A stretch of DNA of 15,437 nt from Octopus sinensis (GCF_006345805.1 NW_021825477.1:1-15437), one strand, 5' to 3'; counted from the stretch's first letter, positions 1,243 to 15,178 are shown. Program-made: numbers and translations. The notes: generated by a model not told the origin, from the sequence alone.

Positions 1243-1724
1243 TATATTTAGGGCTAAAAACCACTATGTGGACAGCCATATGCTAGAAGTAGATCACATA
1301 CGATCAAAACTACAAAGAATGTTCTCTAGAGAAAATTCAGCGGACACCAGAACATAGGCGGCCAAGACAGATGAAAATTATATAAAAATCAAGAATTAAT
1401 CGTATACCGGTTTCGTCTATCAACGAATAAATTACTTACGTAATACTCTAACTGGTGGTTAGTTTTACAAATTATATTGCTTTTGGAACGATCGTACTGA
1501 CGAATCTACGGACGGAGGATTACGTAAGTAATTTGTTCGTTGATAGACGAAACCGGTATACGATTAATTCTTGATTTTTATATAATTTTCATCTGTCCTG
1601 CCCGCCTATGTTCTGGTGTCCGCTGAATTTTCTCTAGAGAACATTCTTTCTTTGTAGTTTTGATCGTATGTGATCTACTTCTAGCATATGGCTGTCCACA
1701 TAGAGGTTTTTAGCCCTAAATATA
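1243..1724 (+). mobile_element. Foldback element 1: about 202/206-bp inverted arms around a 74-bp spacer, hammerhead-containing (PLE-derived, inferred)
   Basis: Arms 1243-1444 and 1519-1724 are reverse complements with 4 substitutions and one 4-nt indel. An HHR motif spans the spacer/right-arm junction. Confidence 0.85.
1491..1564 (+). ncRNA. Type I hammerhead ribozyme motif (HHR-1)
   Basis: Stem I ATCGTA(1491-96)/TACGAT(1559-64); core CTGACGA (1497-1503); stem II TCTA/TAGA extended to ATTAC-GTAA-GTAAT; GAAA (1549-52); palindromic helix III ACCGGT; GUA cleavage triplet (after 1558). Only deviation is A.C at 10.1-11.1. Confidence 0.85.
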
Positions 1725-1830
1725 CACATGTATTGGAATTTTCTCTGATTTTTCAGATTTTTATATGCTAGGCTACTAGTTTTAAATTAATATTAATTAA
1801 ATTAATATTCAATTTATCTCCCTCATTATT

Positions 1831-2295
1831 TAAATATATATATAATATATATATATATATAATACATATACATATATATATATATTATGTATATATGTAA
1901 GTATGTATGCGTGCATGTATGTATGTATGTATGTATGTATGTATGCATGTATGTATGTAACAAAAGTAAAGTTGTAAGATACCGCACACTCACGTACATA
2001 CACTAACATCCCCACCAACACAAAACACACAAACATACTCAAGCACACATACAGATGCGCACACACAACACCCTAACAAATATCAATCATACACATACAC
2101 GCAAACACAAACGTGCACACATATACACACACCATCCTACTAAATATAAAATACACACAGACCCATATACACACGTCACAATACACCCTGGGACCAATCA
2201 AAAATGGCCCCCACACACAAACACAAACACATGTATATACACACACACCACACACATAGAGACGTGCACAGTGACACACACACACACACTCACAC
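1831..2295. repeat. (TA)n/(TATG)n microsatellites and degenerate CA-rich low-complexity tract
   Basis: Directly visible. Confidence 0.9.
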
Positions 2296-2756
2296 CATTC
2301 TGACCTCTGAGATCAGTCCCAAAAAATCACAGAACCATGACAGACTAGCCCCAAAACAAAAAACTCCTTTTAATTCCACATTGCTCTTCCTTCCCCCACC
2401 CCAACCAACCTCTCACACTGTCCCTTAAAATAGCAAGCATTCCTTAGCTACACACAAGACAGAAAAATGCCAAAAAGACAGGTCGGTTCCTCTCCAATTA
2501 TTTGTAAATTCTTAAATATAGCTCCTTCTATGTATATATATATATGCTATCTAACAAACATGATTTTTATTGAACTCTTAATACTTTTTGTTGAATACTT
2601 TCTTAAATACTTTCTTGTAAACTGTTTTTAACATTTTCTTATTACTATCAAAGAATGTATATATGTATTTTAATACGTTTGACAATCTTTTTCTAAAACA
2701 GTGAAAGCAGTCAAGTGAATAAACATCTTTAAAATTGCATTTTCAAACCTTCTCTC

Positions 2757-2792
2757 ATATATATATATGTATGTGTGTTTGTGTGTGTGTGT

Positions 2793-2845
<53 letters not shown>
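2757..2845. repeat. (TA)n-(TG)n-(TATG)n microsatellite
   Basis: Directly visible. Confidence 0.9.
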
Positions 2846-2848
<3 letters not shown>

Positions 2849-3918
2849 CAATATCGGTAAGTGTTTTGCCAGTTCATACGCAGGCTGCGATTTATAGGCT
2901 TCAGATGAAATTTTCATCGTCAATATGCCTGGTGTAAAAATATTTAGAAGTCATAGGCATGCGAGATAACTCACGCCAGGTCCCGTTAGAGAAGTCGTAG
3001 ACATTAATGTATCGTCATCTTTGTGACGCGCGATTGGTATTGATATGTTACATATACATGTGTGTGTGTGTGTGTGTGTGTATCACATATATACGAATGT
3101 ATGTATGCAAAATTACAAACATCACACAAACAAACACACACACATGCATACACACACATATCTATATATGGTTCTTCACTTATTTCCTCGCCAAAAATAT
3201 CTAAAAATGTGATTATTACATCATTACGTTAGAAATGTGAACATTCTAACATGTTTATTCATGTAAATGATAAACAGGGGTTGCATTTTCGAACAAACCT
3301 GTCGTTGTATTGTCCTTTTAATGTGCTTTGCATGTCAGAAATGTTCAGGATATAAGTTACGTTTATATAAGTTGCATTTCCACGCAAGTCAACTGTCCTT
3401 AATTATGCACTCGAACGTTCGCTTTGACAATCTTACACGAAATTGCCAAAGAAAGAAAAGTGCGTTAAAAATTGCAGTGGGACAGGGAATCAAACAGTTT
3501 TTCTGTCGGACAGGTGTAGCAAAACATTTCTTTGTCCCCAAAAGCTATCTATACAATGTTGTAGTCTGTTCTTTTCTCTTCATTTCCAATTTCATTTCGA
3601 AAATTGTCTGGTGATTGCAACTGTATGAGCCATCTTGTAAGTCAAACGATTTTTGAAGGAAACAACAACAAAAAGTTTATTATACAAAGTGACATAGGTG
3701 CAACTAAAACCATATGGATGTGACAATTAAACTAGAGTACTTGGAATGAATAATGATGTCACCCACCTCATAAATAGCTGTCTGAAAATGTCATCACAAT
3801 GCTCTATGTGTATAAGGTATGATATTGTGGTCAAAATTCTATGCAATGTAATCCATATAATTGAAAGTGCTACTGATAAAAACATAAAATGTTATTGTGA
3901 TGCAGAGAATATACTTAC

Positions 3919-3962
3919 CGATATTATGAATGAATTCTTGTGGGATGTTCCTATCAAAATCA
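3919..3962 (-). other. Candidate 44-nt micro-exon (DFDRNIPQEFIHNI)
   Basis: Minus strand: cctaac branch-like motif, gacttcag acceptor, open frame, strong donor G|GTAAGTAT. No partner exons or homology identified. Confidence 0.25.
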
Positions 3963-3996
3963 CTGAAGTCGTTAGGAAGTAACATTGTGTGATTAC

Positions 3997-4275
3997 ATTA
4001 AGAAACTCGTTGGGCAAGGCCGGGATAATGTGAGATGAGATATAAAGTAAACTACAAAAAGAAAATTGAACAAAGTTGGAGTTACTGTCCTCCCTCAATC
4101 ATCTGAACAGTGACTTTTTCTCTCTTTCAATTGTCCACATGTCCTGAAGAAGGGCTCATAACCCCGAAATATAAAGGTATATGATAGAACTCCAATTTTG
4201 CCCTGTTTTCTTTTCATAATTTACATTATATCTCATCTCGCATTGTTCCCACCTTACCGATCAAGTTTCCTTAAT
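3997..4275 (+). mobile_element. Foldback element 2: about 90-bp diverged inverted arms with a hammerhead-like motif in the spacer
   Basis: 3997-4083 versus reverse complement of 4188-4275 align at roughly 75-80% (shared gagatgagatataa, aaaaagaaaa, ttggagtt). The spacer holds CTGAAGA-A-GGG...CCC-GAAA. Confidence 0.75.
4137..4180 (+). ncRNA. Degenerate minimal hammerhead motif (HHR-2)
   Basis: CTGAAGA (4144-50), extra A, stem II GGG/CCC, GAAA (4166-69), palindromic ATAT helix III, AUA triplet. Stem I pairs poorly. Confidence 0.55.
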
Positions 4276-4628
4276 AAGTATAACTGTGCAGACATAATGA
4301 ACTGGACCAGAGAAAGAAGTAAGTATGTACTCAGTAGTAGAGATCAGTTATCCAGTATACGTTAAAGATGAAATAACAAGGAAACAAATATCTACGGATC
4401 CAAGGAGAATTCTGCAGATACAACACCCGTACAAAATTTTTTAGAATTATACCGTGATTATTGAAGTATCTGGTTATGTATCAGCACCCTTAAGAAACTG
4501 TGCTTTACAAAACCAGAAAGAGTATATCTAAATGTAAAATTGCTATTATAAGTCATTCATAGAACTATGAAAATGTTTCGTGCAGACTAAAACTATATCT
4601 GTACAGTCAAAACACATAGAAGCACATA

Positions 4629-5606
4629 ATGCTTTATGATTACAAAAAAAGAAATTCTGCAGCCGAAGTGACTCGAAACATACACTCAGTTTGTGGGAAA
4701 GAATTCTTCAATGAAAGAACCTGCAGAAGATGGTTTGCAAAATTCAGAAGTGGAGATTTCAGCCTTGAAGATGAAGATCGAACAGGACGTCCAGTTGAGT
4801 TTGATGATAAGCTCCTTGAGATGTTACTTGAAGGAAATCCTTCATTATCAGTTGAAGAATTGGCAATAAAGCTTAGTTCAAATCATCTTCAACAACTTGG
4901 AATGGTTCCTAAACTTAGAAAATGGATGCCTCATGAATTGTCCGAAAGCAACCGCAAATCCCGAGTTGACATCTGCCCTTCTCTCCATTCTCGCGAACTC
5001 ATTTCACCCTTTTTGGATAGACTTGTGACTGGTGACGAAAAATGGATCTTCTATCAAAATGTTAAACGTCGTAAACAGTGGCTTGGTAAAAGGGAAAAAG
5101 CTCAACCACAACCGAGAAAGGAGCTTCATGGGAAAAAGGTTCTTCTCTCTATCTGATGTGATTGCAAAGGAGTAATTCACTTTGAATTGTTACCACCTAA
5201 TGCAACAATCAATGCCCAAGTCTACAGTCAGTTATCAGAGCGTTTGAACCATGCTTTGAAGAAAAAAAGACCCTCTTTAGTGAATCGAAAAGGATTGATG
5301 TTTCATCAGGACAATGCGTTACCCTACACTGAAAAGATCAAATCACAGAAGATTGAAGAGCATGATGAGGAAAAAAATTCCTCATCAACCTTATTCTCCC
5401 GACCTTGCTCCTTCTACAACCATTTTTTTCGTAGTTTACAGAATCATTTGTGGGATATAGTTTTCGCAATCTAGGAGGAGGTCGAAACTGACATTTCAGA
5501 GTTCTTCGCTTTGATACCAAAAGAGTTTTACATTGATGGGATTAAAAAGCTTGTAAATAGATGGAAGGAAGTCATAGATAATCAGGAAAAGCACATTGAT
5601 GATTAA
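4629..5606 (+). pseudogene. Mariner (IS630-Tc1-mariner) transposase pseudogene
   Basis: HTH region, WMPHEL (WVPHEL motif), VTGDEKW, HQDNA, and YSPDLAPS in a shifted frame. In-frame stops at 5154-5156 and 5472-5474; compensating frameshifts about 5375-5415; ends GAT GAT TAA at 5606. Confidence 0.95.
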
Positions 5607-5653
5607 ATTTCAATTAAATATAACATTTGATTACTAATTTTCTTTATTCAAAA

Positions 5654-5683
5654 TTCGAACAGAACTTACGGGATGACCTGATA
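5654..5683 (+). repeat. Mariner 3' terminal inverted repeat followed by TA
   Basis: ttcgaacagaacttacgggatgacctga|TA; reverse complement TA|TCAGGTCATCCCGTAAG resembles mariner termini. No convincing 5' partner found. Confidence 0.7.
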
Positions 5684-5689
5684 TATATA

Positions 5690-5984
5690 TATTTATATAT
5701 AATTGGTGAATTGAAGAAATGGAGCTGAACGAAGATTGAACAGAAATCGTTTTATTTCATTCTACACGTGTTTCGAAAGGCACAATTTACCAAAATCCGA
5801 TTGATAATGAGACCATATTGTGTCTTTCTCTCTTCAGGAAGAATAGGAAATCCGTTGGAAAAAAAAAAAACAGAACAGAGGCGGAGCAAAACAAATCGAA
5901 CTAGGCTCCTGTGATTTTTGCTACCAAGGTATCGGTTAAACTTTTGATTAATCTACTACAAGATTATTCATCTTTCTATTTCAC

Positions 5985-5986
<2 letters not shown>
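5690..5986 (-). mobile_element. Short hammerhead-bearing element (PLE terminal-repeat-like) between two (TA)n tracts
   Basis: On the minus strand: pyrimidine-rich run, then an HHR, then a T-rich tail ending at (TA)n. Same layout as the 3' end of the PLE at 11157-12273. Confidence 0.55.
5756..5843 (-). ncRNA. Type I hammerhead ribozyme motif (HHR-3)
   Basis: Minus strand: TTCTTC-CTGAAGA-GA-GAAAGACACAAT...ATTGTGCCTTTC-GAAA-CACGTG-TA-GAATGAA. 12-bp stem II with one mismatch, palindromic ACACGTGT helix III, GUA triplet, 6-bp stem I with one bulge. Confidence 0.8.
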
Positions 5987-6020
<34 letters not shown>

Positions 6021-6040
6021 GTTGTGTGTGTGTGTGTGCA
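5987..6040. repeat. (TA)n-(TG)n microsatellite
   Basis: Directly visible. Confidence 0.9.
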
Positions 6041-6177
6041 TCAAGTCAGACAGAATGAAAGTCAATAACTCTTAGTCTCTAAACACTCATGCAGACATGT
6101 ATATGTTTATATGAGTGTCATTTACTCACATGTATGTCCACATGGGAATAATATACAGCTATAAAATATGTAATATG

Positions 6178-6252
6178 CTACGAAGATACTATGAAGTGTA
6201 TTGAACCTGCGACCCCGCGGTTGGTGGGCGAAGTCTTTACCCATTTGCTCAT
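6178..6252 (-). mobile_element. tRNA-like SINE head (degenerate)
   Basis: Minus strand gagcaaatgggtaa (A-box-like) ... ggtcgcaggttcaatac (B-box-like) at tRNA-like spacing; no complete cloverleaf. Confidence 0.45.
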
Positions 6253-6458
6253 TTAACTATTTTAACTATATATACGTACGCCCATGTTTATCTCCATATA
6301 TCATCTATCCATTGTACAGATTGAGATTTTATTGCCGCGAAGATGGAAACACTTTTCTTTATAAAGCAAAAAGAAAAAAAGAAAAAGCAAACTAAAAAAA
6401 AAAAAAATTAACTGAGACCCAGTGCATAGGAGAAGCGCAGCAGAAAATGGTAAAGAAG

Positions 6459-6459
6459 C

Positions 6460-6502
<43 letters not shown>

Positions 6503-6603
6503 GCACACACACACACACACACGCACACACATACGTATAATAGAAAGGCAACAGAAAATGGTAAAGAAGGTATATTCATATATATACATACACACACACA
6601 CAC

Positions 6604-6638
<35 letters not shown>

Positions 6639-6800
6639 TAATATATATATATAATATATATATACATATATATATATATACATATATATATATAACATAT
6701 ATATTATATATATATATATATAATATATATATATATATATAATATATATATAATATATATATATATATCTATATACACACATGTGAGTGTGTGTGTGTCT
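6459..6800. repeat. (CA)n and (TA)n microsatellite block
   Basis: Directly visible. Confidence 0.95.
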
Positions 6801-6956
6801 AAGAATGTTTTTCTTATATCCGCCATTTCTTCCAGCACACCTCCAACGCTGATATTTTTCGAAGAATGTATTTATGGTTGCTCTCTAGTGTTAAAACCAA
6901 GACATAGGAATCAGCAAACATCCTACTGAGCATTAGATATACCGATAACCCATTCT

Positions 6957-7030
6957 ATTGTTCTTGTTGTTACTGTTACTGTTGTTGTTGTTGTTGCTGC
7001 TGCTACTGCTGGTAGTAGTAGCAGTAGAAG
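6957..7030. repeat. Degenerate trinucleotide repeat (GTT/GCT/GTA)n
   Basis: Directly visible; source of the poly-L ORF. Confidence 0.9.
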
Positions 7031-7299
7031 TGTTGAAGTCGATATTTTTGTTGCTGTTGTTATCATTCGTATTCTCTTTTCATTTCTTTATTTTTTTCTT
7101 TTTTCATTTTTGCTCTGTGTTGTTGCTACTTGTGAGACATAGAGGTTATCACATCTGAGAAAGGCATGTTATACGACCGTTGTTTTGAGGCTGGCGTTTA
7201 ATATATCTATTAGATCTACTTAAACTGTTATTAGAAGAGTCAGAGATGACATTTAGCAGATAGATTCCTACCCACTGTATCTATCTTTCCCGAATGCGC

Positions 7300-7509
7300 T
7301 TATGTATATATGTGTATGATTAAATATGCATACACATACAGTCACACACACGCACACTCACATATATAAATACATATATATGCATAATAATGCGCGTGCG
7401 TTTATATACGCAGATGCAATATATATGTATATATGTGTGTGTGTATATATATATAATATTATATATATATGTGTGTGTGTGTGTGTATGTATATGTATAT
7501 ATAGACATA

Positions 7510-7560
<51 letters not shown>

Positions 7561-7807
7561 GCATGCATACATATATATATTTATATGTACACATGAATAC
7601 ATACACAAACACGCGCATGTGCACGCATGCCCCCCACACATACCTACACATATATATGTATATGCATTTACATACATATACGTATATACTTATATGCATT
7701 TACATACATATACGTATATACTTATATGCATCTGTGTGTGTATGTGTGTGTGTGAGTGTGTGTGTGTGAGTGTGTGTGTGTGTGTGTCTGTGTGTGTGTG
7801 TGTGTGT
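7300..7807. repeat. Long compound (CA)/(TA)/(TG) microsatellite region
   Basis: Directly visible. Confidence 0.95.
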
Positions 7808-9045
7808 AGCTTATGGCTGTCTGAGATTCGATGATGAATTTCTCCGTCTTCATTTCTATCCTTTGCTTGATGAATACGTACATGCGATACAAGGCAAATA
7901 CGCAAAGTATAGATTCGAGGTCAAATCGGATGCGGATGAAAAACTTATCCTGTGATTGAATTTGGCAATGGTGACGTGCCATCTTCGTTCACCCTGCTGT
8001 ATAGTTCATTCCGATTTAAACTGTTGCTTCCCATTATATGTAACAATTTCAACAAACTTACGTATCAGTAGCGAGTCCGTTGAGAATTGCACATGTAACG
8101 AAAATGCGCTCCAGTTGGTTTTCCCAATTTTTCTTAGAGCCCCTGTGTTCATGAGAGTCATGTATTAGTTCACCCATCGAGCAAGCACCATTCTTGACAG
8201 ATGGGATTTCTTGATACAGATTGGGTATTTGGTCCACCGGAGAATGTACTGATGAATCGCGTGCTCTTGGAAGTTTCAGCATGAGGGATTGTCTTATCCT
8301 TAGAGAGTTCAAATACACATTCCAAACAGCGCATGTAGGATGTTTCTATTATCCTGATCTGCTTAAGGCGGCAAGCCGACAGAATCATTTGCATGATCGG
8401 GCAAAATGCTTAGTATCATTTTGTCCGTTTTTACGTTCAGAGTTCAAATTCCACTGAGGTCTATTTTGCTGTTCATCCTTTCGGGGACGATAAAACAGTT
8501 ATCAGTTGATCACTGGGGTCGATATAATCAACTCACCCCTACCCTAAAATTGCTGTTCTTGACCAATATTTCAAATCAATATTCTGATTTGCTTCTACAA
8601 GAGCGTCCACTTTTTGCACCAGTATAACATGGATGAATAACTGACAACGTTTTCGTGAAAAAAAGGTGAAGTTTCCGGTTCGAGATGACACGTTTCAAAA
8701 AGCGTCCAAACGTCGAATGGCTCTCTTTGATTGTTACAGATGATACTTCCAAGATTCAAAATATCATAGGTGTAGCCTAATTCTTGATTTTTAAGAAGAT
8801 TTGGATGATAATGTCTGAAAGGTGTTTGCAATGTAAGAGTCTTCTGAATATGTAACTCGTTACATCCCAAATCGGTTTTTTTCCCAACTATTGCCGAAAT
8901 ACAAATATTATACTGTTTGTGTTGCACTGAGATGAGGTGAGATGAGGAGCCGACTTGAAACTGAGGAAGTGCTCTTGAAGCTGTCATGGAAGGGTGGCTT
9001 AGAAATAGGATGCGAGCGATTTTTCTTTCTTTCTTGCAACATATA
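7808..9045 (+). pseudogene. Unidentified decayed coding-like region
   Basis: High-complexity, CpG-containing stretch with protein-like plus-strand segments broken by stops and frameshifts (LRFDDEFLRLHFYPLLDEYVHAIQGKYAKYRFEVKS; YPVIEFGNGDVPSSFTLLY; STEVYFAVHPFGDDK; ESSEYVTRYIPNRFFSQLLPKYKYY). No family recognised. Confidence 0.3.
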
Positions 9046-9516
9046 AAAGAGATACGCCACGGTTGTTACTGCAACATGTATTTTTGCAAACATGTATTTT
9101 TAAATTGTATCTTAAATTGTATCTTACCTAAGTGTATTGAAAAATGATAATAATATAAGATAACGTTAGACAATACAAAACTGCATTAGTTTTCAAATAT
9201 GGATATTTAGTTGCTGTAATACAGTTTACACTGACCAATCGACAGTGAAAGAAAAAGAAAAAGTCTTTGTCTTAATACTATATAGACAGACAATTTAACC
9301 AGACGATGAGAAATGATTGCGCAACAATGCAGCTCTGTCAGAGAATGTAATAATTGTTTTATTACTCCGCAGTTCAGGAAATTTTTTTTCTCAAAAAATA
9401 TTTTCATGTTTGTCCCAGTTTTCTCCGAATCACCTCGTTAAGATAGTGCTTTTGTGGCTATCGAGTGACGTATTTATTTCTGCCTTTAGGTTGTAAAATT
9501 GCAAATTAGCCACCCA

Positions 9517-9589
9517 TATTATATATATATATATATATATATACATATATATACATATATATAATATGTATATATATGTATATATATAT

Positions 9590-9643
<54 letters not shown>

Positions 9644-9650
9644 TATACAT
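9517..9650. repeat. (TA)n microsatellite
   Basis: Directly visible. Confidence 0.95.
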
Positions 9651-9990
9651 ATATAATATTAATTAGAGACAAAACCCACTATTATGCAAATCAAACAAAA
9701 GAAATACTTAATCCAATACATAAAAAATTTTATATAAATTAAATAAAATTATGTTATCCACTACAATTTCTTAAACGCTGTAATAAGTTAGTCATTTAAA
9801 CTTACTTCATAATTTAAAATTGAATAGAAGGTCTTGAAACCACCTGATGAATGTCCTTAGAAGTGACAGAAAACAATTGTAGTGGATAACATAATTTTAT
9901 TTAATTTATATAAAATTTTTAATTATTGGATTAAGTCTTTCTTTGTTTGATTTGCATAATAGTGGTTTTGTCTCTAATTAATATTATATA
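9650..9990 (+). mobile_element. Foldback element 3: about 118-bp inverted arms around a 106-bp spacer, hammerhead at the inner junction
   Basis: 9650-9768 versus reverse complement of 9875-9990 differ at about 5-6 positions; HHR core lies at 9844-9885. Confidence 0.85.
9840..9885 (+). ncRNA. Type I hammerhead ribozyme motif (HHR-4)
   Basis: CCAC-CTGATGA-A-TGTC...GACA-GAAA-A-CAATTG-TA-GTGG: stem I CCAC/GTGG, stem II TGTC/GACA, palindromic ACAATTGT, GUA triplet; one surplus A after GAAA. Confidence 0.75.
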
Positions 9991-10067
9991 TTTTACTATA
10001 AAATTGGATTCAATCCTAAATCTGATTTTTCCCTGTAAATTTGGATTTATTCTCTAATATTTATTAT

Positions 10068-10069
<2 letters not shown>

Positions 10070-10130
<61 letters not shown>
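10070..10130. repeat. (TA)n-(TG)n microsatellite
   Basis: Directly visible. Confidence 0.95.
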
Positions 10131-10135
<5 letters not shown>

Positions 10136-10850
10136 AAAATACAAACTGGGACAAGAACGCAAAACATTTAGGAGACGATACAAAAACACGGACGGGACAT
10201 TCGAAGCCTTCAATCTTCAGTCAAGAAGCGGATCATCCTCGCAATTTCGGCTGGTTAATCTTGAGATTGCTCCAATCTGGCCAGCCCCAAGGAAAAACTA
10301 AGCTAAGCGCATTAGATTCCTTGGAAGAAAGCTTCGAATGCATACAAAATAAGGACGGGAAAACGGATGATGTTACACGAATATGAATACAGAAATAATA
10401 CGTAAAAGCAATAATTATAATACGTAGAAACAATAATAATAATAAAATAACAATAATAGAACATCACAAACAGGCGTCTTTCGACGAGACGAATTAAGCT
10501 CAGCTGGCGTGTTAGGAATGTGCCTTGGGGCAGAGAAAAAAATGTTGATGTTGCCGCTACCGCTGCTAGACCCGAAAAGACCAGCAGTCGATCAGTCAGT
10601 CACATGTGAAGAGAAGAGAGAGGAAAAGAGGGACAGAGGAATTAAGGAGGGGGAGAAGAGAGAGAAAAAGAGGAACAAGGAATTAAGGAGGAGGAGAAGA
10701 GAGAGAGAGCTAGAAAAAGAGACAGGGGCAAAGTGAAGTGCAAAGTAAGAAAGGCAAAGTAATGTAGGAGAGGGGGGAGAGAGAGACAGAGTCGTACCAA
10801 GTTTAGAGAAATGTGTACTTACATATAAGAGAGAGGGTACGCACGTCGCT
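10131..10850 (-). mobile_element. Non-coding interspersed element (about 720 bp) with a structured end; probably retro-derived
   Basis: Bounded by microsatellites on both sides; pyrimidine-rich minus-strand body; its terminal about 190 bp recurs at 10868-11058. Strand and class are inferred. Confidence 0.5.
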
Positions 10851-10867
10851 ATATATATATATGTATG

Positions 10868-11055
10868 TATAAAAATACAAACTGGGACAAGAACGCAAAA
10901 CATTTAGGAGACGATACAAAAAACACGGATGGAACATTCGAAGCCTTCAATCTTCAGTCAAGGACCGGATCATCCTCGCAATTTCGGCTGATTAATCTGG
11001 AGATTACTCCAATCTGGCCAGCCCTAAGGAAAAACTAAGCTAAGCGCATTAGATT

Positions 11056-11058
<3 letters not shown>
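10868..11058 (-). repeat. Truncated second copy of the 10131-10320 terminus (direct repeat)
   Basis: tataaaaatacaaactgggacaagaacgc...gcgcattagattcc occurs at both positions with only scattered substitutions. Confidence 0.9.
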
Positions 11059-11134
<76 letters not shown>

Positions 11135-11156
11135 TTATTTACATATATACATATAT
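11059..11156. repeat. (TA)n-(CA)n-(TA)n microsatellite
   Basis: Directly visible. Confidence 0.95.
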
Positions 11157-11159
11157 GTG

Positions 11160-11880
11160 TCCTTCACTATCCATGACCTCATCTCCTCCTCCCGTCTCCC
11201 CCACCGCCTCTAACTTCATTGTCCGCACCCCTCGCACTTTAATTTACTTCCTCCCCAAAATACACAGACCTAACAACCCTGGCCGTCCCATCGTCTCCTC
11301 CTGCAACTACCTCACCGAACGCATCTCCAGATATCTTGACCGTGTCCTTGCCCCGCTAGTGGCTTCCCTCCCCTGTCTCGTCTATGACACCAACCATGCT
11401 CTTCGTTTGTTCAACTCTTTCTCCTTCTCTCCTGGCCCATCTACACTTCTCTTCACTCTTGACATCGAGAGTCTATACACGGTGATCCCTCACCACGAGG
11501 GGATTCATGCACTCCAGCATTTCCTTGACCTTCGACCCAACCTCCAACCTGACATATCCATAGTCCTTCGTCTGGCCGAACTTGTCCTCCCACTTCACTG
11601 CTTCTCGTTCGCGGGTGAATTTTACCAGCACTCCTCGGGAGTGGCCATGGGAACGAGAATGGGACCCAACTATTCGAACCTGTTCGTTGGCTACGTTGAG
11701 GCCCAAATACTCTCAAGTTTCACTGGTCCAACTCCTGAACTATACGGTCGTTATATTGACGACCGTATAGTGCGAACTTACTCTCCCGCGAACATCTAGA
11801 CTCATTCCTCTCTTTTGTCAAATCTTTCCAACCTGGCCTCCACTTCTCCAGCACTATATCCGAGATCTCAGTATCCTCTC
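11160..11880 (+). pseudogene. PLE reverse transcriptase fragment
   Basis: YFLPKIHRPNNPGRPIVSS, LFTLDIESLYTVIP, GVAMGTRMGPNYSNLFVG, YGRYIDD. Continues after a frameshift as LSREHLDSFLSFVKSFQPGLHFSSTISEISVS, then homology ends. Confidence 0.9.
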
Positions 11881-12148
11881 TTGCTGTGGCACCTACTTCC
11901 TCTCTTCACTCTTACCCACCTTCTCCCCTCCACCCTCACCCATCATAGTCACTCCTTCCCTCGTTACCCCACCCCTACCATCCCTATGCATCCCATCCAA
12001 CCCCCACCCCATTCTTTAGACCCACACTTGCTTCTCTCACTCTCGTCTCCCCCACACCTCAAAACCACCACTCCACACCACACACCACCATCAGATCGCT
12101 AGCCACTAAACCTTTTTCTATTTTCTCTCTCTGTTTATTTCTGTGTTC

Positions 12149-12184
12149 CTTTCTGTCAAAGAGCGTAGGCTCGAAACGTAAAAG
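12149..12184 (+). ncRNA. Minimal hammerhead motif with non-canonical core (HHR-5)
   Basis: CTTT-CTGTCAA-A-GAGC-GTAG-GCTC-GAAA-CG-TA-AAAG: stems I and II perfect, palindromic ACGT helix III, GUA triplet; core differs from CUGANGA at positions 6 and 8. Confidence 0.65.
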
Positions 12185-12298
12185 ACTTTCTCACTTCCCG
12201 AGCATTAAACTAATTCATCTGTTTGTTGTTTACACACCCGTCTTTTGTTTTCTTTTTTTTTGTAAATTCTCCCTATATATATATATGTATATATGTAA

Positions 12299-13293
12299 GC
12301 ACAGGCGTGGTTGTGAGGTATGAAGTTGCAACCACATGGTTCAGGGTTCAGTTCCACTGCGTAGCACCTTGGGCAAGTGCTTTCTACTACAACCTCAGGC
12401 TGATATATGTTTTCTTAGTAGATTTGGTAGACTGAAACTGAAAGAAGCCCGTTTTGTGTGTGTGTGTATATGTATATATATATATATATTATATGAAAAC
12501 GTGCGTTTGTGTGTGTGTGTCTTTGTGCCTATGTTTGTCCTCTACCACCGTTTGACAACCGGTGTTGTCATGTTTACGTTTCCATAACTTTGTAGTTCGG
12601 CAAAAGAGACCGATAGAATAAGTCTTCTTTTTTAATATACCCAGGCCTATTCCCCATTTTTTAGGAGGGGGTAGCCACAACAGCACACACATAAGGCATT
12701 CCATTCATTTCCCACCTCAAGGGGCGAGCCTCATTTTATGCTCGGGTCAAGACATAGAACACAACCCCCTAATATCAGTAGTGAGACCCGACAGCATATT
12801 CTAACTTACCCCCGCCACATCATGCTGGTTCCGTACCCCTTTAAGCAACATCAATATTCACTCATCCATCCACAAACACTCTCCAAGCTTTCCTATCATT
12901 TATAAACTCTCATGCCACTCTCACTCCAACATAGCTTTCCTCACTCCATCCATTCACACTAACCGATGCCTGTCTCTATTTCTGCTGACTACCAATTCTG
13001 TCTTCATCACCTTCCTTACCATCTGCTCCTCATTCATTCTCTTCATGTAGCCAAACCACCTCAACATTCGTCTATCCATTTTGGTTGTTAGTTTTTCTTT
13101 CATTCCTGCTCGCTTTCGCACCTCCTCATTCCTCATCCTGTCCAACCGTATCATACAAACCATAGCTCTCAAACATCTCTAGGCTTAAAAAAAAGTCCTG
13201 ATGTAGATTTGTTCGGCTAAAACCCTTCAAGGTGGTGCTTCAACATGGCCGCAGTCAAATAACCGAAACACGTAGAAGATTAAAAGATAAAAG
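12299..13293 (+). mobile_element. tRNA-derived SINE split by a LINE insertion (parts 12299-12623 and 13179-13293)
   Basis: Co-linear with the intact copy at 14755-15178: ...gatagaataagt | insertion | ctaggctt...catggccgcagtcaaat. Confidence 0.8.
12624..13178 (-). mobile_element. RTE-clade-like LINE 3' fragment (ORF C-terminus plus 3' UTR)
   Basis: Minus-strand LRAMVCMIRLDRMRNEEVRKRAG...RMLRWFGYMKRM resembles the RTE/BovB C-terminal LRWFGHV.RM motif; A-rich end at 12624. Confidence 0.8.
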
Positions 13294-13319
13294 CCATATA
13301 AAAGTCATATATGTATAAA

Positions 13320-14129
13320 TCTATATATATAAAACTTGTGTGTCTGTGTGTGTATCTGTGTGTTTAACTTCCTGGCACATCTCCTAGCCAACACATCGTA
13401 GAACCACCAAAAATGGGTCACTTTAGGCGAATGAAAATTGAACTGCGCTATTTCTGTTCCGAAATTCATCTCGCAAGTGCAAAAATCGATAATGTGTTTG
13501 TTTAGGCCTTATCCCATGCATTGAATAGTGAACTTTACTCAGTCAGCTGTTTGACGTGAACTGTGTTCACCACGCGTGCAAGCATGCGTAAATTGTATGA
13601 AAAATAAAAAATCAAGATATAAAAACGAATTGCCGTAAACATTGTGGAAATTCGGCAAAGAAATGAATTTTCGGGATGTCGCCTGGAGGGTTTTTTCGAA
13701 TTAATCGTTTGGACTTTGTGAACACATACCAATTGTTTTCATAACATTTTTAACGCTTTGAATTAAATGTGACCATTTTGCGTTGAGTCTGCAGTTTGAA
13801 TCACTTTAACCAAATTTTAGCTGGCCGGATTTTTGATCATCACGATACATCGCCAACGACTCCCTGAAACTCTCCCCTGAAATCCCCGTTGAGAAATACT
13901 GATCTAAAAGAATAATTCAACAATGCAATTATTTGATTTAACAAAAATTTATGAAACGCTTCTACGTACTTCCTATCGAGGAAATGGAACACATAAGCGT
14001 AAAAATAGAGGGCGTTAAATGCTTGATTTTAAAACCAAAATAATTGAATTTTGATTGAACTTCATCCAAGTTTAGCTTAATTCGCGCGTGCATAGAACGC
14101 ACGAGCGCACGAGCCGAGCAATACTGCTA

Positions 14130-14167: not shown

Positions 14168-14370
14168 CATGGAATTATGTCAGTGAACAGGTCGCGGTCT
14201 CAAAGTGACGAAAATATTTTGGCAAATTAAATTTAAATGTTGAAGTAAATCTGACGGTCTTTGTGTGTTTTTTAAGGGGCTTATAAACACCTCCACGCTG
14301 CAATTGTTTTCGTTCCACCACACCATCTCATATTGGGTCATTTGCTATGCAAGTACATCTCCTATATACG
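14167..14370 (-). mobile_element. Probable non-coding end fragment of a DNA transposon
   Basis: Complex sequence bounded by TA repeats; resembles an octopus Tc1/mariner-type end from memory only. Confidence 0.3.
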
Positions 14371-14379
14371 TAATGTCTT

Positions 14380-14677
14380 TTTTTTAAGCTGGTACTTATT
14401 TCTCGGTCTCTTTCTTGCTGAACTGCTAGGTTAGAGGGACGTAAACAAGCCAACACTGGTTGTCATGCGGTACGGATGGGAGGAAACACTCACAAACACA
14501 AACAACACACATAGATGTATACATACATCACTTTCTGTCGACCACATCCACTCACAAGGTTTTGTGCGGCCCGGATCAATAGTAGAGGATAATTGTCCAA
14601 GGCACCATGCAATAGGATCGAAACCGGAACCATGTGGTTGGAAAACAAACTTACTACCACACTGTCACGTTGCGCCT
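14380..14677 (-). mobile_element. tRNA-derived SINE (diverged, 3'-truncated)
   Basis: Reverse complement gives ggcgcaacgtg...caaccacatggttccggtttcgatcc...ccttggacaa...ccttgtgagtgga, homologous to 14755-15178. Confidence 0.8.
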
Positions 14678-14689
14678 ATATATATATAT

Positions 14690-14740
14690 AGCGGTGGTGC
14701 CCCAGCATGGCCGCGGCCTTCGGGCTAAAAAATTTTTAAG
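14690..14740 (+). mobile_element. Isolated SINE 3'-tail fragment
   Basis: ggtggtgccccagcatggccgc matches the tail motif ggcggagctccagcatggccgc at about 15112-15132. Confidence 0.55.
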
Positions 14741-14754
14741 GATTTAAGGATATA

Positions 14755-15178
14755 GGCGCAGGAGTGGCTGTGTGGTAAGTAGCTTGCTAACCAACCACAT
14801 GGTTCCGGGTTCAGTCCTACTGCGTGGCATCTTGGGCAAGTGTCTTCTGCTATAGCCCCGGGCTGACCAATGCCTTGTGAGTGGATTTGAGACGGAACTG
14901 AAAGAAGCCTGTCGTATATATGTGTATATATATATTCTATGTATGTGTGTGTGTGTTTGTGTGTCTGTGTTTGTCCCCTAGCATTGCTTGACAACCGATG
15001 CTGGTGTGTTTACGTCCCCGTCACTTAGCGGTTCGGCAAAAGAGCCCGATAGAATAAGTACTGGGCTTACAAAGAATAAGTCCCGGGGTCGATTGGCTCG
15101 ACTAAAAAAAAGGCGGAGCTCCAGCATGGCCGCAGTCAAATGACTGAAACAAGTAAAAGAGAAAAGAGAGAAAGAGAA
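14755..15178 (+). mobile_element. tRNA-derived SINE, full-length
   Basis: A box TGGCTGTGTGG (14765-75), B box GGTTCAGTCC (14808-17), internal (TG)n, tail ...gactgaaacaagtaaaagagaaaag. Confidence 0.85.

What the first reader, a model, noticed from the sequence alone, without database searches (positions are those of the whole stretch)
1243..9990. Recurrent hammerhead-centred foldback elements: three unrelated inverted-repeat elements, each with a ribozyme at the inner junction
Seen: three foldbacks (1243-1724, 3997-4275, 9650-9990) with no evident mutual sequence similarity share one layout: antisense arm, 70-105-nt spacer holding the HHR 5' half, then a sense arm carrying or abutting the HHR 3' half and a tail. 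The antisense arm stops at the tip of the stem II hairpin (element 1), inside palindromic helix III (element 3), or about 10 nt downstream of the cleavage site (element 2). Known: PLEs carry minimal type I HHRs in their terminal repeats and can have inverted terminal segments. Inference: these are non-coding head-to-head pairs of 5'-truncated PLE ends, perhaps from two TPRT events primed on both strands of one cut, with one cDNA stalling or switching template in the ribozyme fold. In elements 1 and 3 the arm extends past the cleavage site, so the template would have been uncleaved. A read-through RNA would fold back and mask the cleavage site in elements 1 and 3, acting as a built-in antisense switch. 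They would be mis-annotated as MITEs.
Basis: partly seen in the sequence, partly recalled or inferred. Interest (0 to 1): 0.88.

Follow-up and report, generated by a model that had tools for sequence, protein, structure and literature searches.

The report
Back-to-back truncated Penelope retroelement ends
The three hairpin-shaped repeats are most likely pairs of short Penelope-like retrotransposon tail ends inserted back-to-back, each keeping one small hammerhead ribozyme motif near the middle; this layout is already described for these elements, so the finding is real but fairly ordinary.

Summary
Three foldbacks sit at the stated coordinates (arms 95.7%, 78.4% and 95.8% identical; spacers 66, 104 and 106 nt). 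Each carries a Penelope-type minimal type I hammerhead motif at the inner junction. Rfam finds none of them, but in a control it also misses genuine PLE hammerheads. A covariance model built only from PLE-linked hammerheads of other organisms returns the three motifs among its four best window hits. The fourth hit is a decayed hammerhead about 350 nt downstream of a PLE reverse-transcriptase remnant in the same window. Element 2's motif lacks helix I.

The best explanation is head-to-head pairs of severely 5'-truncated PLE 3' ends in AT-rich or (TA)n targets. This architecture is published (inverted 5'-truncated copy; both target strands nicked and extended). In seven head-to-head pairs from other invertebrate contigs, the short copy ends anywhere from inside the ribozyme to 1.9 kb upstream of it. 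Breakpoints are therefore set per insertion. The ribozyme sits at the junction mainly because it lies 34-160 nt from the element's 3' end. Ribozyme-directed stalling and an "antisense switch" are not shown. No other copies from the source genome could be retrieved, so a MITE-like alternative is not fully excluded.

The parts
1243..1448 (-). E1 antisense arm: inverted copy of the 3' ~210 nt of the unit
   Evidence: 95.7% gapped identity to 1515-1724
1449..1514 (+). E1 spacer: unique 5' part of the longer sense copy; holds helix I 5' strand, the CUGACGA box and the 5' strand of helix II
1515..1724 (+). E1 sense arm: apical hairpin and 3' strand of helix II, GAA-ACCGGU-A, cleavage site after 1558, helix I 3' strand, and a 160-nt tail
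1490..1565 (+). E1 PLE-type minimal type I hammerhead (helix I 7 bp, long helix II, palindromic CCGG loop 3)
   Evidence: Passes the descriptor. PLE-HHR covariance model gives 13.8 bits, E 0.03. The MFE fold keeps helices I and II, z = -2.1. No Rfam hit.
3997..4083 (-). E2 antisense arm
   Evidence: 78.4% identity to 4188-4275
4084..4187 (+). E2 spacer; contains the whole hammerhead-like motif
4141..4179 (+). E2 hammerhead-like motif, probably decayed: CUGAAGA-a-GGG/CCC-GAA-AUAU-A with putative cleavage after 4173 and no helix I
   Evidence: Covariance model gives 20.7 bits, E 2.4e-4. Passes the core descriptor. Fails the strict descriptor for lack of helix I.
4188..4275 (+). E2 sense arm (tail)
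9649..9768 (-). E3 antisense arm
   Evidence: 95.8% gapped identity to 9875-9991
9769..9874 (+). E3 spacer: 5' part of the sense copy, with helix I 5' strand, CUGAUGA, all of helix II, GAA and the first half of the helix III palindrome
9838..9887 (+). E3 PLE-type minimal hammerhead, cleavage after 9881
   Evidence: Passes the descriptor. Covariance model gives 16.1 bits, E 0.006.
9875..9991 (+). E3 sense arm: second half of the palindrome, cleavage site, helix I 3' strand, and a 104-nt tail running into AT-rich sequence
5700..5990 (-). Fourth hammerhead-bearing unit (HHR 5840-5760, palindromic CACGUG loop 3). It is bounded by (TA)n on both sides and has no convincing inverted arm. Same kind of element as a solo copy.
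11155..12275 (+). 5'-truncated PLE remnant: RT fragment 11155-11799, decayed hammerhead 12147-12186, and a ~90-nt tail ending in (TA)n
   Evidence: RVT_1 match. Relatives at up to 63% identity are RT + CxxC linker + GIY-YIG elements. The relic hammerhead is the best covariance-model hit in the window, E 1.6e-4. End in (TA)n.

Best explanation
Each element is a head-to-head pair of two very short, 5'-truncated copies of the 3' end of a Penelope-like retroelement (PLE), or of a short non-autonomous PLE derivative. The three elements come from three different families.

Inferred mechanism:
1. The PLE RT/GIY-YIG protein cuts an AT-rich or (TA)n target on both strands.
2. Each 3'-OH primes reverse transcription from a site a short distance downstream of the hammerhead.
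3. One cDNA runs 190-280 nt, through the ribozyme and 40-70 nt beyond it.
4. The other cDNA stops after 88-210 nt.
5. The two ends are joined.

This gives an antisense arm, a spacer that is the extra 5' part of the longer copy, and a sense arm. The hammerhead ends up at the inner junction because in PLEs it lies only about 34-160 nt from the 3' terminus, and both copies here are that short.

Shown: the repeats, the ribozyme motifs and their PLE type, the (TA)n association, a PLE RT remnant in the same window, and the same layout in other genomes.
Inferred: two-strand priming, how the ends were joined, and that the units are PLE-derived rather than independently mobile.
For: Motif identity.
- A covariance model built from 19 hammerheads that lie next to PLE RT/GIY-YIG ORFs in other organisms was run over the window with filters off. 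Its top four hits are the RT-linked relic at 12147-12186, then E2, E3 and E1.
- Descriptor hits are 3-4 against 0.07-0.08 expected by chance.
- All three motifs show features listed for PLE minimal hammerheads in PMC4209133: an unpaired nucleotide after CUGANGA, and a palindromic helix III/loop 3.

PLE context.
- The window holds an EN+ PLE RT remnant followed by a hammerhead and a ~90-nt tail ending in (TA)n.
- 6 of 10 unit termini lie within 10 nt of a (TA)>=4 run, against a 10% background. PLEs are reported to prefer (TA)n and AT-rich sites (PMC8557442, PMC11167929).

Same architecture elsewhere.
- L001 has a 1984-nt head-to-head PLE pair and a 175-nt mini foldback whose arm ends in the helix II loop.
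- L084, L083, L009, L086 and L087 each have a short inverted copy (75-679 nt) upstream of a longer RT-bearing copy.

Published support.
- Minimal hammerheads occur ~100-700 bp apart on opposite strands, and most motifs are solo, probably from truncated PLEs (PMC4209133).
- A PLE protein cleaves and extends both strands, starts RT about 90 nt downstream of the HHR cut, and mainly uses uncleaved RNA (PMC11167929).
Against: - No other copy of any of the three families could be retrieved. Homology of the arms to a full-length PLE of the same genome is therefore untested. The arms show no similarity to the 3' end of the RT remnant in the window or to any fetched locus.
- Target-site duplications cannot be read in the TA-rich flanks. 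A 'TA' duplication, as in Tc1/mariner MITEs, is possible at all three.
- E2's motif lacks helix I.
- Rfam models do not recognise any of the motifs.
- Inverted pairs of tRNA-derived SINEs also occur: window 14378-15076 and L001 4700-5188. Head-to-head pairs are therefore not unique to hammerhead units.
- Self-cleavage is untested.
Confidence: 0.75

Rival explanations
1. They are MITE-like or foldback DNA transposons with long terminal inverted repeats and TA duplications, moved by a transposase. The hammerhead-like motif is a passenger or a coincidence.
For: - The structure is almost entirely palindromic.
- TA or TTAA can be read at the boundaries of E1, E2 and E3 (direct reading).
- E1 and E3 share a subterminal 11-mer at similar distances from their ends, as transposase-binding sites would (and direct reading).
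- A mariner-type transposase pseudogene lies at 4629-5600.
Against: - Three unrelated MITE families would each need a PLE-type hammerhead in the same polarity and position. Chance expectation is 0.08 motifs per window.
- The motifs match a model trained on PLE hammerheads.
- E2's ends do not resemble any inverted repeat around the mariner copy.
- The same layout is found attached to real PLE ORFs elsewhere.
- A shared subterminal motif is equally expected for an RT recognition or initiation site.
Confidence: 0.1
2. Each foldback arose once from PLE ends, but the foldback as a whole is now a propagating non-autonomous unit, copied with fixed breakpoints by PLE machinery or another route.
For: - E1 and E3 have young, 96%-identical arms.
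- Both copies in all three window elements are unusually short, whereas in other genomes the sense copy is usually more than 1.9 kb.
- Non-autonomous PLE derivatives are known to exist (bioRxiv 10.64898/2026.07.22.740005).
Against: - No second copy of any of the three is present in the window or in any fetched sequence.
- The solo unit at 5700-5990 and the relic at 12147 show that the same kind of unit occurs without an inverted partner.
Confidence: 0.1
3. The inverted duplication is post-insertional (replication template switching, or palindrome formation followed by an asymmetric central deletion) or an assembly artefact, and is unrelated to the insertion mechanism.
For: - PLE structures are noted to disturb assemblies (PMC8557442).
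- SINE inverted pairs without hammerheads occur in the window and in L001. This shows that inverted pairs are not specific to hammerhead units.
Against: - The arms differ by substitutions and indels (4-22% divergence). This argues against an assembly artefact.
- The outer ends of both arms coincide with the unit's 3' terminus at (TA)n in three unrelated families. This fits insertion-time formation better than random later duplication.
Confidence: 0.05

Closest known systems
Penelope-like element insertions with an adjacent inverted 5'-truncated copy (Evgen'ev & Arkhipova 2005; Craig et al. 2021, PMC8557442)
   Same: - Inverted repeat formed by two copies whose 3' ends point outward.
- Hammerhead near the 3' end.
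- (TA)n or AT-rich targets.
- Variable breakpoints.
   Different: - Here both copies are under 300 nt and non-coding. The whole insertion therefore looks like a 280-480-nt hairpin, and only one copy keeps a complete ribozyme.
- No pseudo-LTR tandem and no ORF.
- Homology to a full-length PLE of the same genome was not tested.
PLE minimal type I hammerhead ribozymes (Cervera & de la Pena 2014, PMC4209133)
   Same: - CUGANGA and GAAA boxes.
[quoted passage not shown]
- Short helix I.
- 1-bp helix III with a palindromic loop, suited to dimer formation.
- Motifs dispersed as solo copies or as pairs on opposite strands.
   Different: - G10.1-C11.1 is present only in E2.
- E1 has a much longer helix II (44 nt between the boxes).
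- E2 lacks helix I.
- Activity is unknown.
Two-strand cleavage and extension by the Anolis Poseidon PLE protein (Frangieh et al. 2024, PMC11167929)
   Same: - It provides a mechanism for oppositely oriented cDNAs at one AT-rich cut.
- RT starts a short distance downstream of the hammerhead.
- Uncleaved RNA is used, as the arms of E1 and E3 crossing the cleavage site require.
   Different: It is an in vitro result for one vertebrate element. Joining of the two cDNAs was not reconstituted, and nothing here shows which protein made these insertions.
MITEs / foldback class II elements
   Same: Small, non-coding and nearly palindromic, in TA-rich sites.
   Different: - They carry a PLE-type ribozyme in a fixed polarity.
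- No defined TSD could be established.
- The termini do not match any transposon in the window.
Animal non-LTR retrozymes (Cervera & de la Pena 2020, PMC7229834; Li et al. 2026 preprint)
   Same: Short non-coding units with a type I hammerhead, thought to derive from PLE terminal repeats.
   Different: Retrozymes are head-to-tail tandem repeats that give circular RNAs. No tandem repeat is present here; the copies are inverted.

Membership tests
Type I hammerhead ribozyme, PLE minimal variant | Catalytic boxes CUGANGA and GAAA in the right order and spacing | tested here: met
   E1 1497/1552, E2 4144/4166, E3 9844/9869
Type I hammerhead ribozyme, PLE minimal variant | Helix II closing on the core, with an unpaired nucleotide between A9 and 10.1 and a G10.1-C11.1 pair | tested here: inconclusive
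   All three have the extra A and a stem of at least 3 bp. G10.1-C11.1 is present only in E2. E3 closes with U-A, and E1 with an A.C mismatch followed by UCUA/UAGA (direct reading).
Type I hammerhead ribozyme, PLE minimal variant | Helix I formed by the flanks, and a non-G nucleotide at the cleavage position | tested here: inconclusive
   E1 has 7 bp and E3 has 4 bp, both with A17. E2 has A17 but 0 bp of helix I.
Type I hammerhead ribozyme, PLE minimal variant | Palindromic positions 15.2-16.2 / loop 3 (dimer-type helix III) | tested here: met
   ACCGGU in E1, AUAU in E2, (A)ACAAUUGU in E3
Type I hammerhead ribozyme, PLE minimal variant | Significant score against a curated or independently trained covariance model | tested here: met
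   Rfam gives no hit at E<=10, but it also misses true PLE hammerheads in a control. Model R1, built from PLE-linked hammerheads of other organisms, gives E2 2.4e-4, E3 6e-3 and E1 0.03. These are ranks 2-4 of the window (E-values are rough).
Type I hammerhead ribozyme, PLE minimal variant | Self-cleavage at the predicted site | not testable with these tools
   Needs in vitro transcription and cleavage assays. Published PLE minimal hammerheads cleave poorly as monomers (PMC4209133).
Penelope-like element insertion (head-to-head truncated copies) | Hammerhead within the 3'-terminal region, followed by a short tail to the element end | tested here: met
   Tails are 160, 96 and 104 nt in the window, and 34-65 nt in PLE copies from other loci.
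Penelope-like element insertion (head-to-head truncated copies) | Inverted 5'-truncated copy abutting the 5' end of a longer copy, with both 3' ends pointing outward | tested here: met
   The same layout occurs with RT-bearing copies in L001, L084, L083, L009, L086 and L087.
Penelope-like element insertion (head-to-head truncated copies) | Sequence homology of the unit to the 3' end or pLTR of an RT + GIY-YIG element of the same genome | not testable with these tools
Within the window there is no similarity to the 3' end of the RT remnant.
Penelope-like element insertion (head-to-head truncated copies) | RT / GIY-YIG coding capacity | tested here: not met
   No ORF longer than 51 codons lies in E1-E3. 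This is expected for ends truncated to under 300 nt. An EN+ PLE RT remnant lies elsewhere, at 11155-11799.
Penelope-like element insertion (head-to-head truncated copies) | AT-rich / (TA)n target preference | tested here: met
   6 of 10 termini of hammerhead units lie within 10 nt of a (TA)>=4 run, against a 10% background.
MITE (class II non-autonomous element) | Defined target-site duplication flanking the terminal inverted repeats | tested here: inconclusive
   TA (or TTAA for E2) can be read at the ends. The flanks are TA-rich and the inverted repeat itself runs into them (direct reading).
MITE (class II non-autonomous element) | Termini matching an autonomous DNA transposon | tested here: not met
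   No inverted-repeat relation exists between E2's ends and the adjacent mariner-like copy. No match in any fetched sequence.
Non-LTR retrozyme | Head-to-tail tandem repeats, each with a hammerhead | tested here: not met
   No direct repeats of these units are present.

The most novel reading that the evidence does not exclude
The hammerhead fold, or its self-complementary helix II and palindromic helix III, acts as a preferred stop, template-switch or annealing site when the two oppositely primed PLE cDNAs are joined. Short inverted copies would then end in or at the ribozyme more often than chance allows. That would give the PLE hammerhead a structural role in integration rather than, or besides, RNA cleavage.
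Probability: 0.15. Interest if true: 0.65.

Novelty: new member of a known kind. Interest (0 to 1): 0.3.

Why it matters
What hammerheads do in Penelope-like elements is still open. Cleavage is not needed for insertion in vitro (PMC11167929), and some PLE clades thrive without them (PMC8557442). If inverted-copy breakpoints proved to be enriched at the ribozyme genome-wide, that would point to a structural role during integration and would be easy to test.

As it stands, the loci are good small examples of a known but poorly annotated insertion architecture. They would probably be mislabelled as MITEs by repeat pipelines. Read-through transcripts would form long hairpin RNAs that might feed small-RNA silencing of the family; this last point is inference and was not tested.

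Tried and rejected
- Rfam over the whole window and over each element gave only low-complexity or hairpin miRNA look-alikes and no hammerhead. This was set aside as uninformative after Rfam also missed true PLE hammerheads.
- I tried to find other copies by searching translated short ORFs of E1/E3, and then of E2/E4, flanking ORFs and a SINE peptide, against the protein collection. There were no hits, so the source genome is not represented there.
- An exact 22-mer from E1 found nothing in metagenome contigs.
- Global MAFFT alignment of the four units was uninformative. Local alignments were not above shuffles.
- A first terminal-window comparison missed the E1/E3 shared motif because flanking bases were included.
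- My first inverted-repeat scripts were faulty. One search dropped self-palindromic HSPs. over-extended arms across spacers. A split-BLAST approach and the repeat tool replaced them.
- I considered that spacers are always short (a snap-back model). This was rejected: spacers of 1217-2402 nt occur in L084, L083, L009, L086 and L087.
- I considered E2 as a mariner-derived MITE and found no terminal similarity.
- I considered a short inverted arm for the 5700-5990 unit. The match is mostly (TA)n and disappears with low-complexity filtering.
- The hit at 8661-8563 from the relaxed descriptor was treated as chance, since 1.5 such hits are expected per window.

Full report
**What the window is.** The sequence is eukaryotic. 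It is full of TA, GT and CA microsatellites and contains:
- a Mos1/mariner-type transposase pseudogene at 4629-5600;
- tRNA-derived SINE-like repeats;
- a reverse-transcriptase fragment at 11155-11799.

The SINE sequence looks cephalopod (octopus-like) to me. That is recollection only and was not tested.

**The foldbacks are real.** The repeat finder and a split-BLAST give three inverted repeats.

| Element | Arms | Identity | Spacer |
|---|---|---|---|
| E1 | 1243-1448 / 1515-1724 | 95.7% over 210 nt, one 4-nt indel | 66 nt |
| E2 | 3997-4083 / 4188-4275 | 78.4% over 88 nt | 104 nt |
| E3 | 9649-9768 / 9875-9991 | 95.8% over 120 nt | 106 nt |

As RNA they fold into long hairpins of -353.6, -98.1 and -150 kcal/mol. 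The z-scores are -37, -9.9 and -23.9. The units show no overall similarity to each other. E1's left arm and E3 do share the 11-mer ATAGTGGTTTT, roughly 20-30 nt from the outer end (direct reading; sequences printed).

**The hammerhead motifs are real as motifs.** Rfam reports no hammerhead, either in the whole window at E<=1 or in each element at E<=10. I therefore wrote a type I descriptor and simulated Markov-1 windows as a null.
- The strict form requires CUGANGA, helix II of at least 3 bp, GAAA, helix III, H17 and helix I of at least 3 bp. It gives three hits against 0.07 expected: 1490-1565 (+), 9840-9885 (+), and an unlisted one at 5840-5760 (-).
- A second form requires the core, helix II and a palindromic helix III, but not helix I. 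It gives four loci, adding E2 at 4144-4173, against 0.08 expected.

All have an unpaired A after the CUGANGA box and a palindromic helix III (ACCGGU, AUAU, CAAUUG, CACGUG). Cervera and de la Pena list both as emergent features of PLE minimal hammerheads (PMC4209133). Read this way, E2's motif has A at the cleavage position and a G-C closing pair, but no helix I.

**An independent test of the motif class.**
- Relatives of the window's RT fragment reach 63% identity. I fetched 88 loci carrying such RTs from other organisms.
- These relatives are canonical endonuclease-positive PLEs: RT, a CxxC linker and a GIY-YIG motif. They carry clear minimal hammerheads downstream of the ORF.
- Rfam also missed every hammerhead in six of these loci. 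The Rfam negatives in the window therefore carry no weight.
- From 19 distinct foreign hammerheads I built a covariance model. Pair counts were 85% paired against 62% in shuffles. The sequences were chosen with a pairing descriptor, so that figure is partly circular.
- Run over the window with filters off, the model's top four hits are 12147-12186 (E 1.6e-4), E2 (2.4e-4), E3 (6e-3) and E1 (0.03). The next hit is at E 0.2.
- The best hit is a decayed hammerhead (CUGUCAA box) about 350 nt downstream of the RT fragment. It is followed by a ~90-nt tail that ends in (TA)n. The window thus shows the arrangement RT - hammerhead - short tail - (TA)n on a recognisable PLE remnant.

**What the foldbacks are.** In each one, the sense arm is the hammerhead-proximal tail of the unit, and the antisense arm is its reverse complement. 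The spacer is the extra 5' sequence of the longer, sense copy.

This is the published PLE insertion architecture. [quoted passage not shown] A bias to (TA)n is reported (PMC8557442). Minimal hammerheads were seen ~100-700 bp apart on opposite strands, and mostly as solo motifs from truncated PLEs (PMC4209133).

Biochemistry gives a mechanism (PMC11167929). A PLE protein nicks and extends both strands of an AT-rich target. It starts reverse transcription about 90 nt downstream of the hammerhead cut site and uses mainly uncleaved RNA. This fits the arms of E1 and E3 running across the cleavage site.

In the window, 6 of 10 termini of hammerhead units lie within 10 nt of a (TA)>=4 run, against a 10% background.

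**Is the ribozyme at the junction for a special reason?** I measured seven head-to-head PLE pairs in the foreign loci.

| Pair | Short-copy length | Where it ends relative to the hammerhead |
|---|---|---|
| L086 | 75 nt | 1 nt beyond the 5' edge |
| L001 mini-foldback | 82 nt | 21 nt inside, in the helix II loop |
| L009 | 129 nt | 40 nt upstream |
| L084 | 257 nt | 157 nt upstream |
| L087 | 306 nt | 216 nt upstream |
| L083 | 679 nt | 572 nt upstream |
| L001 | 1984 nt | 1879 nt upstream |

Spacers range from 20 to 2402 nt. Breakpoints therefore vary from insertion to insertion.

With the window's three cases, 4 of 10 short copies end in or at the hammerhead. My own arithmetic, using an exponential truncation model, expects 0.9-1.5. 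The window cases were selected for this property, though. Without them the count is 2 of 7 against 0.6-1.1 expected, which is not significant.

The simplest reading is geometric. The hammerhead lies 34-160 nt from the 3' end, and short copies often stop in that neighbourhood. Stalling or joining at the self-complementary helices remains possible but is not shown.

**Other points of the interpretation.** A read-through transcript would bury the cleavage site of E1 and E3 in a long duplex. That is a physical consequence and no evidence for a switch. E2's decayed arms and missing helix I argue against maintenance by selection.

**Alternatives.**
- A MITE reading cannot be fully excluded. TA or TTAA can be read at the ends, E1 and E3 share a subterminal motif, and no other copies could be obtained.
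- It would, however, require three unrelated families each to hold a PLE-type hammerhead in the same place and polarity. E2's ends do not match the neighbouring mariner copy.
- Inverted SINE pairs without hammerheads exist in the window (14378-15076) and in L001. Head-to-head pairs as such are therefore not specific to hammerhead units, which is a caveat for any mechanism tied to the ribozyme.

**Verdict.** The core interpretation, head-to-head truncated PLE ends, is well supported and already described in the literature. The ribozyme-stalling and antisense-switch ideas are untested extras. These are new instances of a known kind, of modest interest.

Noticed in passing
window 5700-5990 (- strand; HHR 5840-5760): A fourth hammerhead-bearing unit that is not in the finding. 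It reads CUGAAGA, a long helix II, then GAA-ACACGUGU-A. It is bounded by (TA)n on both sides and has no convincing inverted partner, so it looks like a solo truncated copy.
   Followed up: yes
window 11155-12275 (+): A 5'-truncated EN+ PLE remnant. It consists of an RT fragment (214-codon ORF, YIDD motif), a decayed hammerhead at 12147-12186 (box CUGUCAA) and a tail ending in (TA)n. Relatives in other organisms reach 63% identity and carry a CxxC linker plus GIY-YIG.
   Followed up: yes
window 14178-14224 (+): A hammerhead-like motif whose box is GUGAACA, that is G3/C8 instead of C3/G8 (a compensatory swap of the core pair). It has helix I of 5 bp, helix II of 5 bp and a palindromic AAUAUU, and it starts right after a (TA)n run. 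About 0.12 motifs of this quality are expected per window.
   Followed up: partly
window 1696-1706 region and 9957-9970 region: E1 (left-arm version) and E3 share the 11-mer ATAGTGGTTTT, roughly 20-30 nt from their outer ends. The elements are otherwise unrelated. It could be a shared RT recognition or initiation site, or a transposase site.
   Followed up: partly
window 14378-15076: Two tRNA-derived SINE-like copies lie head-to-head (about 68% identity over 734 nt of self-inverted alignment). This is a foldback with no hammerhead. Further SINE copies lie at 12293-12623 and 13187-13363.
   Followed up: partly
window 10126-10321 and 10862-11058: A 197-nt direct repeat (95% identical), each copy bordered by microsatellites. 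The second copy lies just upstream of the PLE RT remnant. On the minus strand it carries CUGAAGA...GAA, but no GAAA and no hammerhead fold. No similarity to the 3' end of the PLE remnant was found.
   Followed up: partly
window 4629-5600: A mariner/Mos1-type transposase pseudogene (HTH_48 plus partial DDE domain) broken by stops and frameshifts. E2 lies about 350 bp upstream but shares no terminal repeat with it.
   Followed up: partly
window 12954-13172 (-): A 72-codon ORF (..LRWFGYMKRM..). From memory it resembles the C-terminal region of LINE-type reverse transcriptases. It lies between two SINE fragments and has no Pfam hit.
   Followed up: no
L001 20316-20494: In another invertebrate contig (ENA ERZ25067889), a 175-nt mini foldback has the same layout as the window's elements. 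Its 20-nt spacer holds the hammerhead's 5' half, and the arm begins in the helix II loop.
   Followed up: yes
L001 4700-5188; L086 2023-2311: Other short foldbacks in foreign loci have no hammerhead at the junction. One is an inverted pair of tRNA-derived SINEs (98% identity, 29-nt spacer). The other is a 114-nt inverted repeat lying 380 nt upstream of a hammerhead.
   Followed up: no
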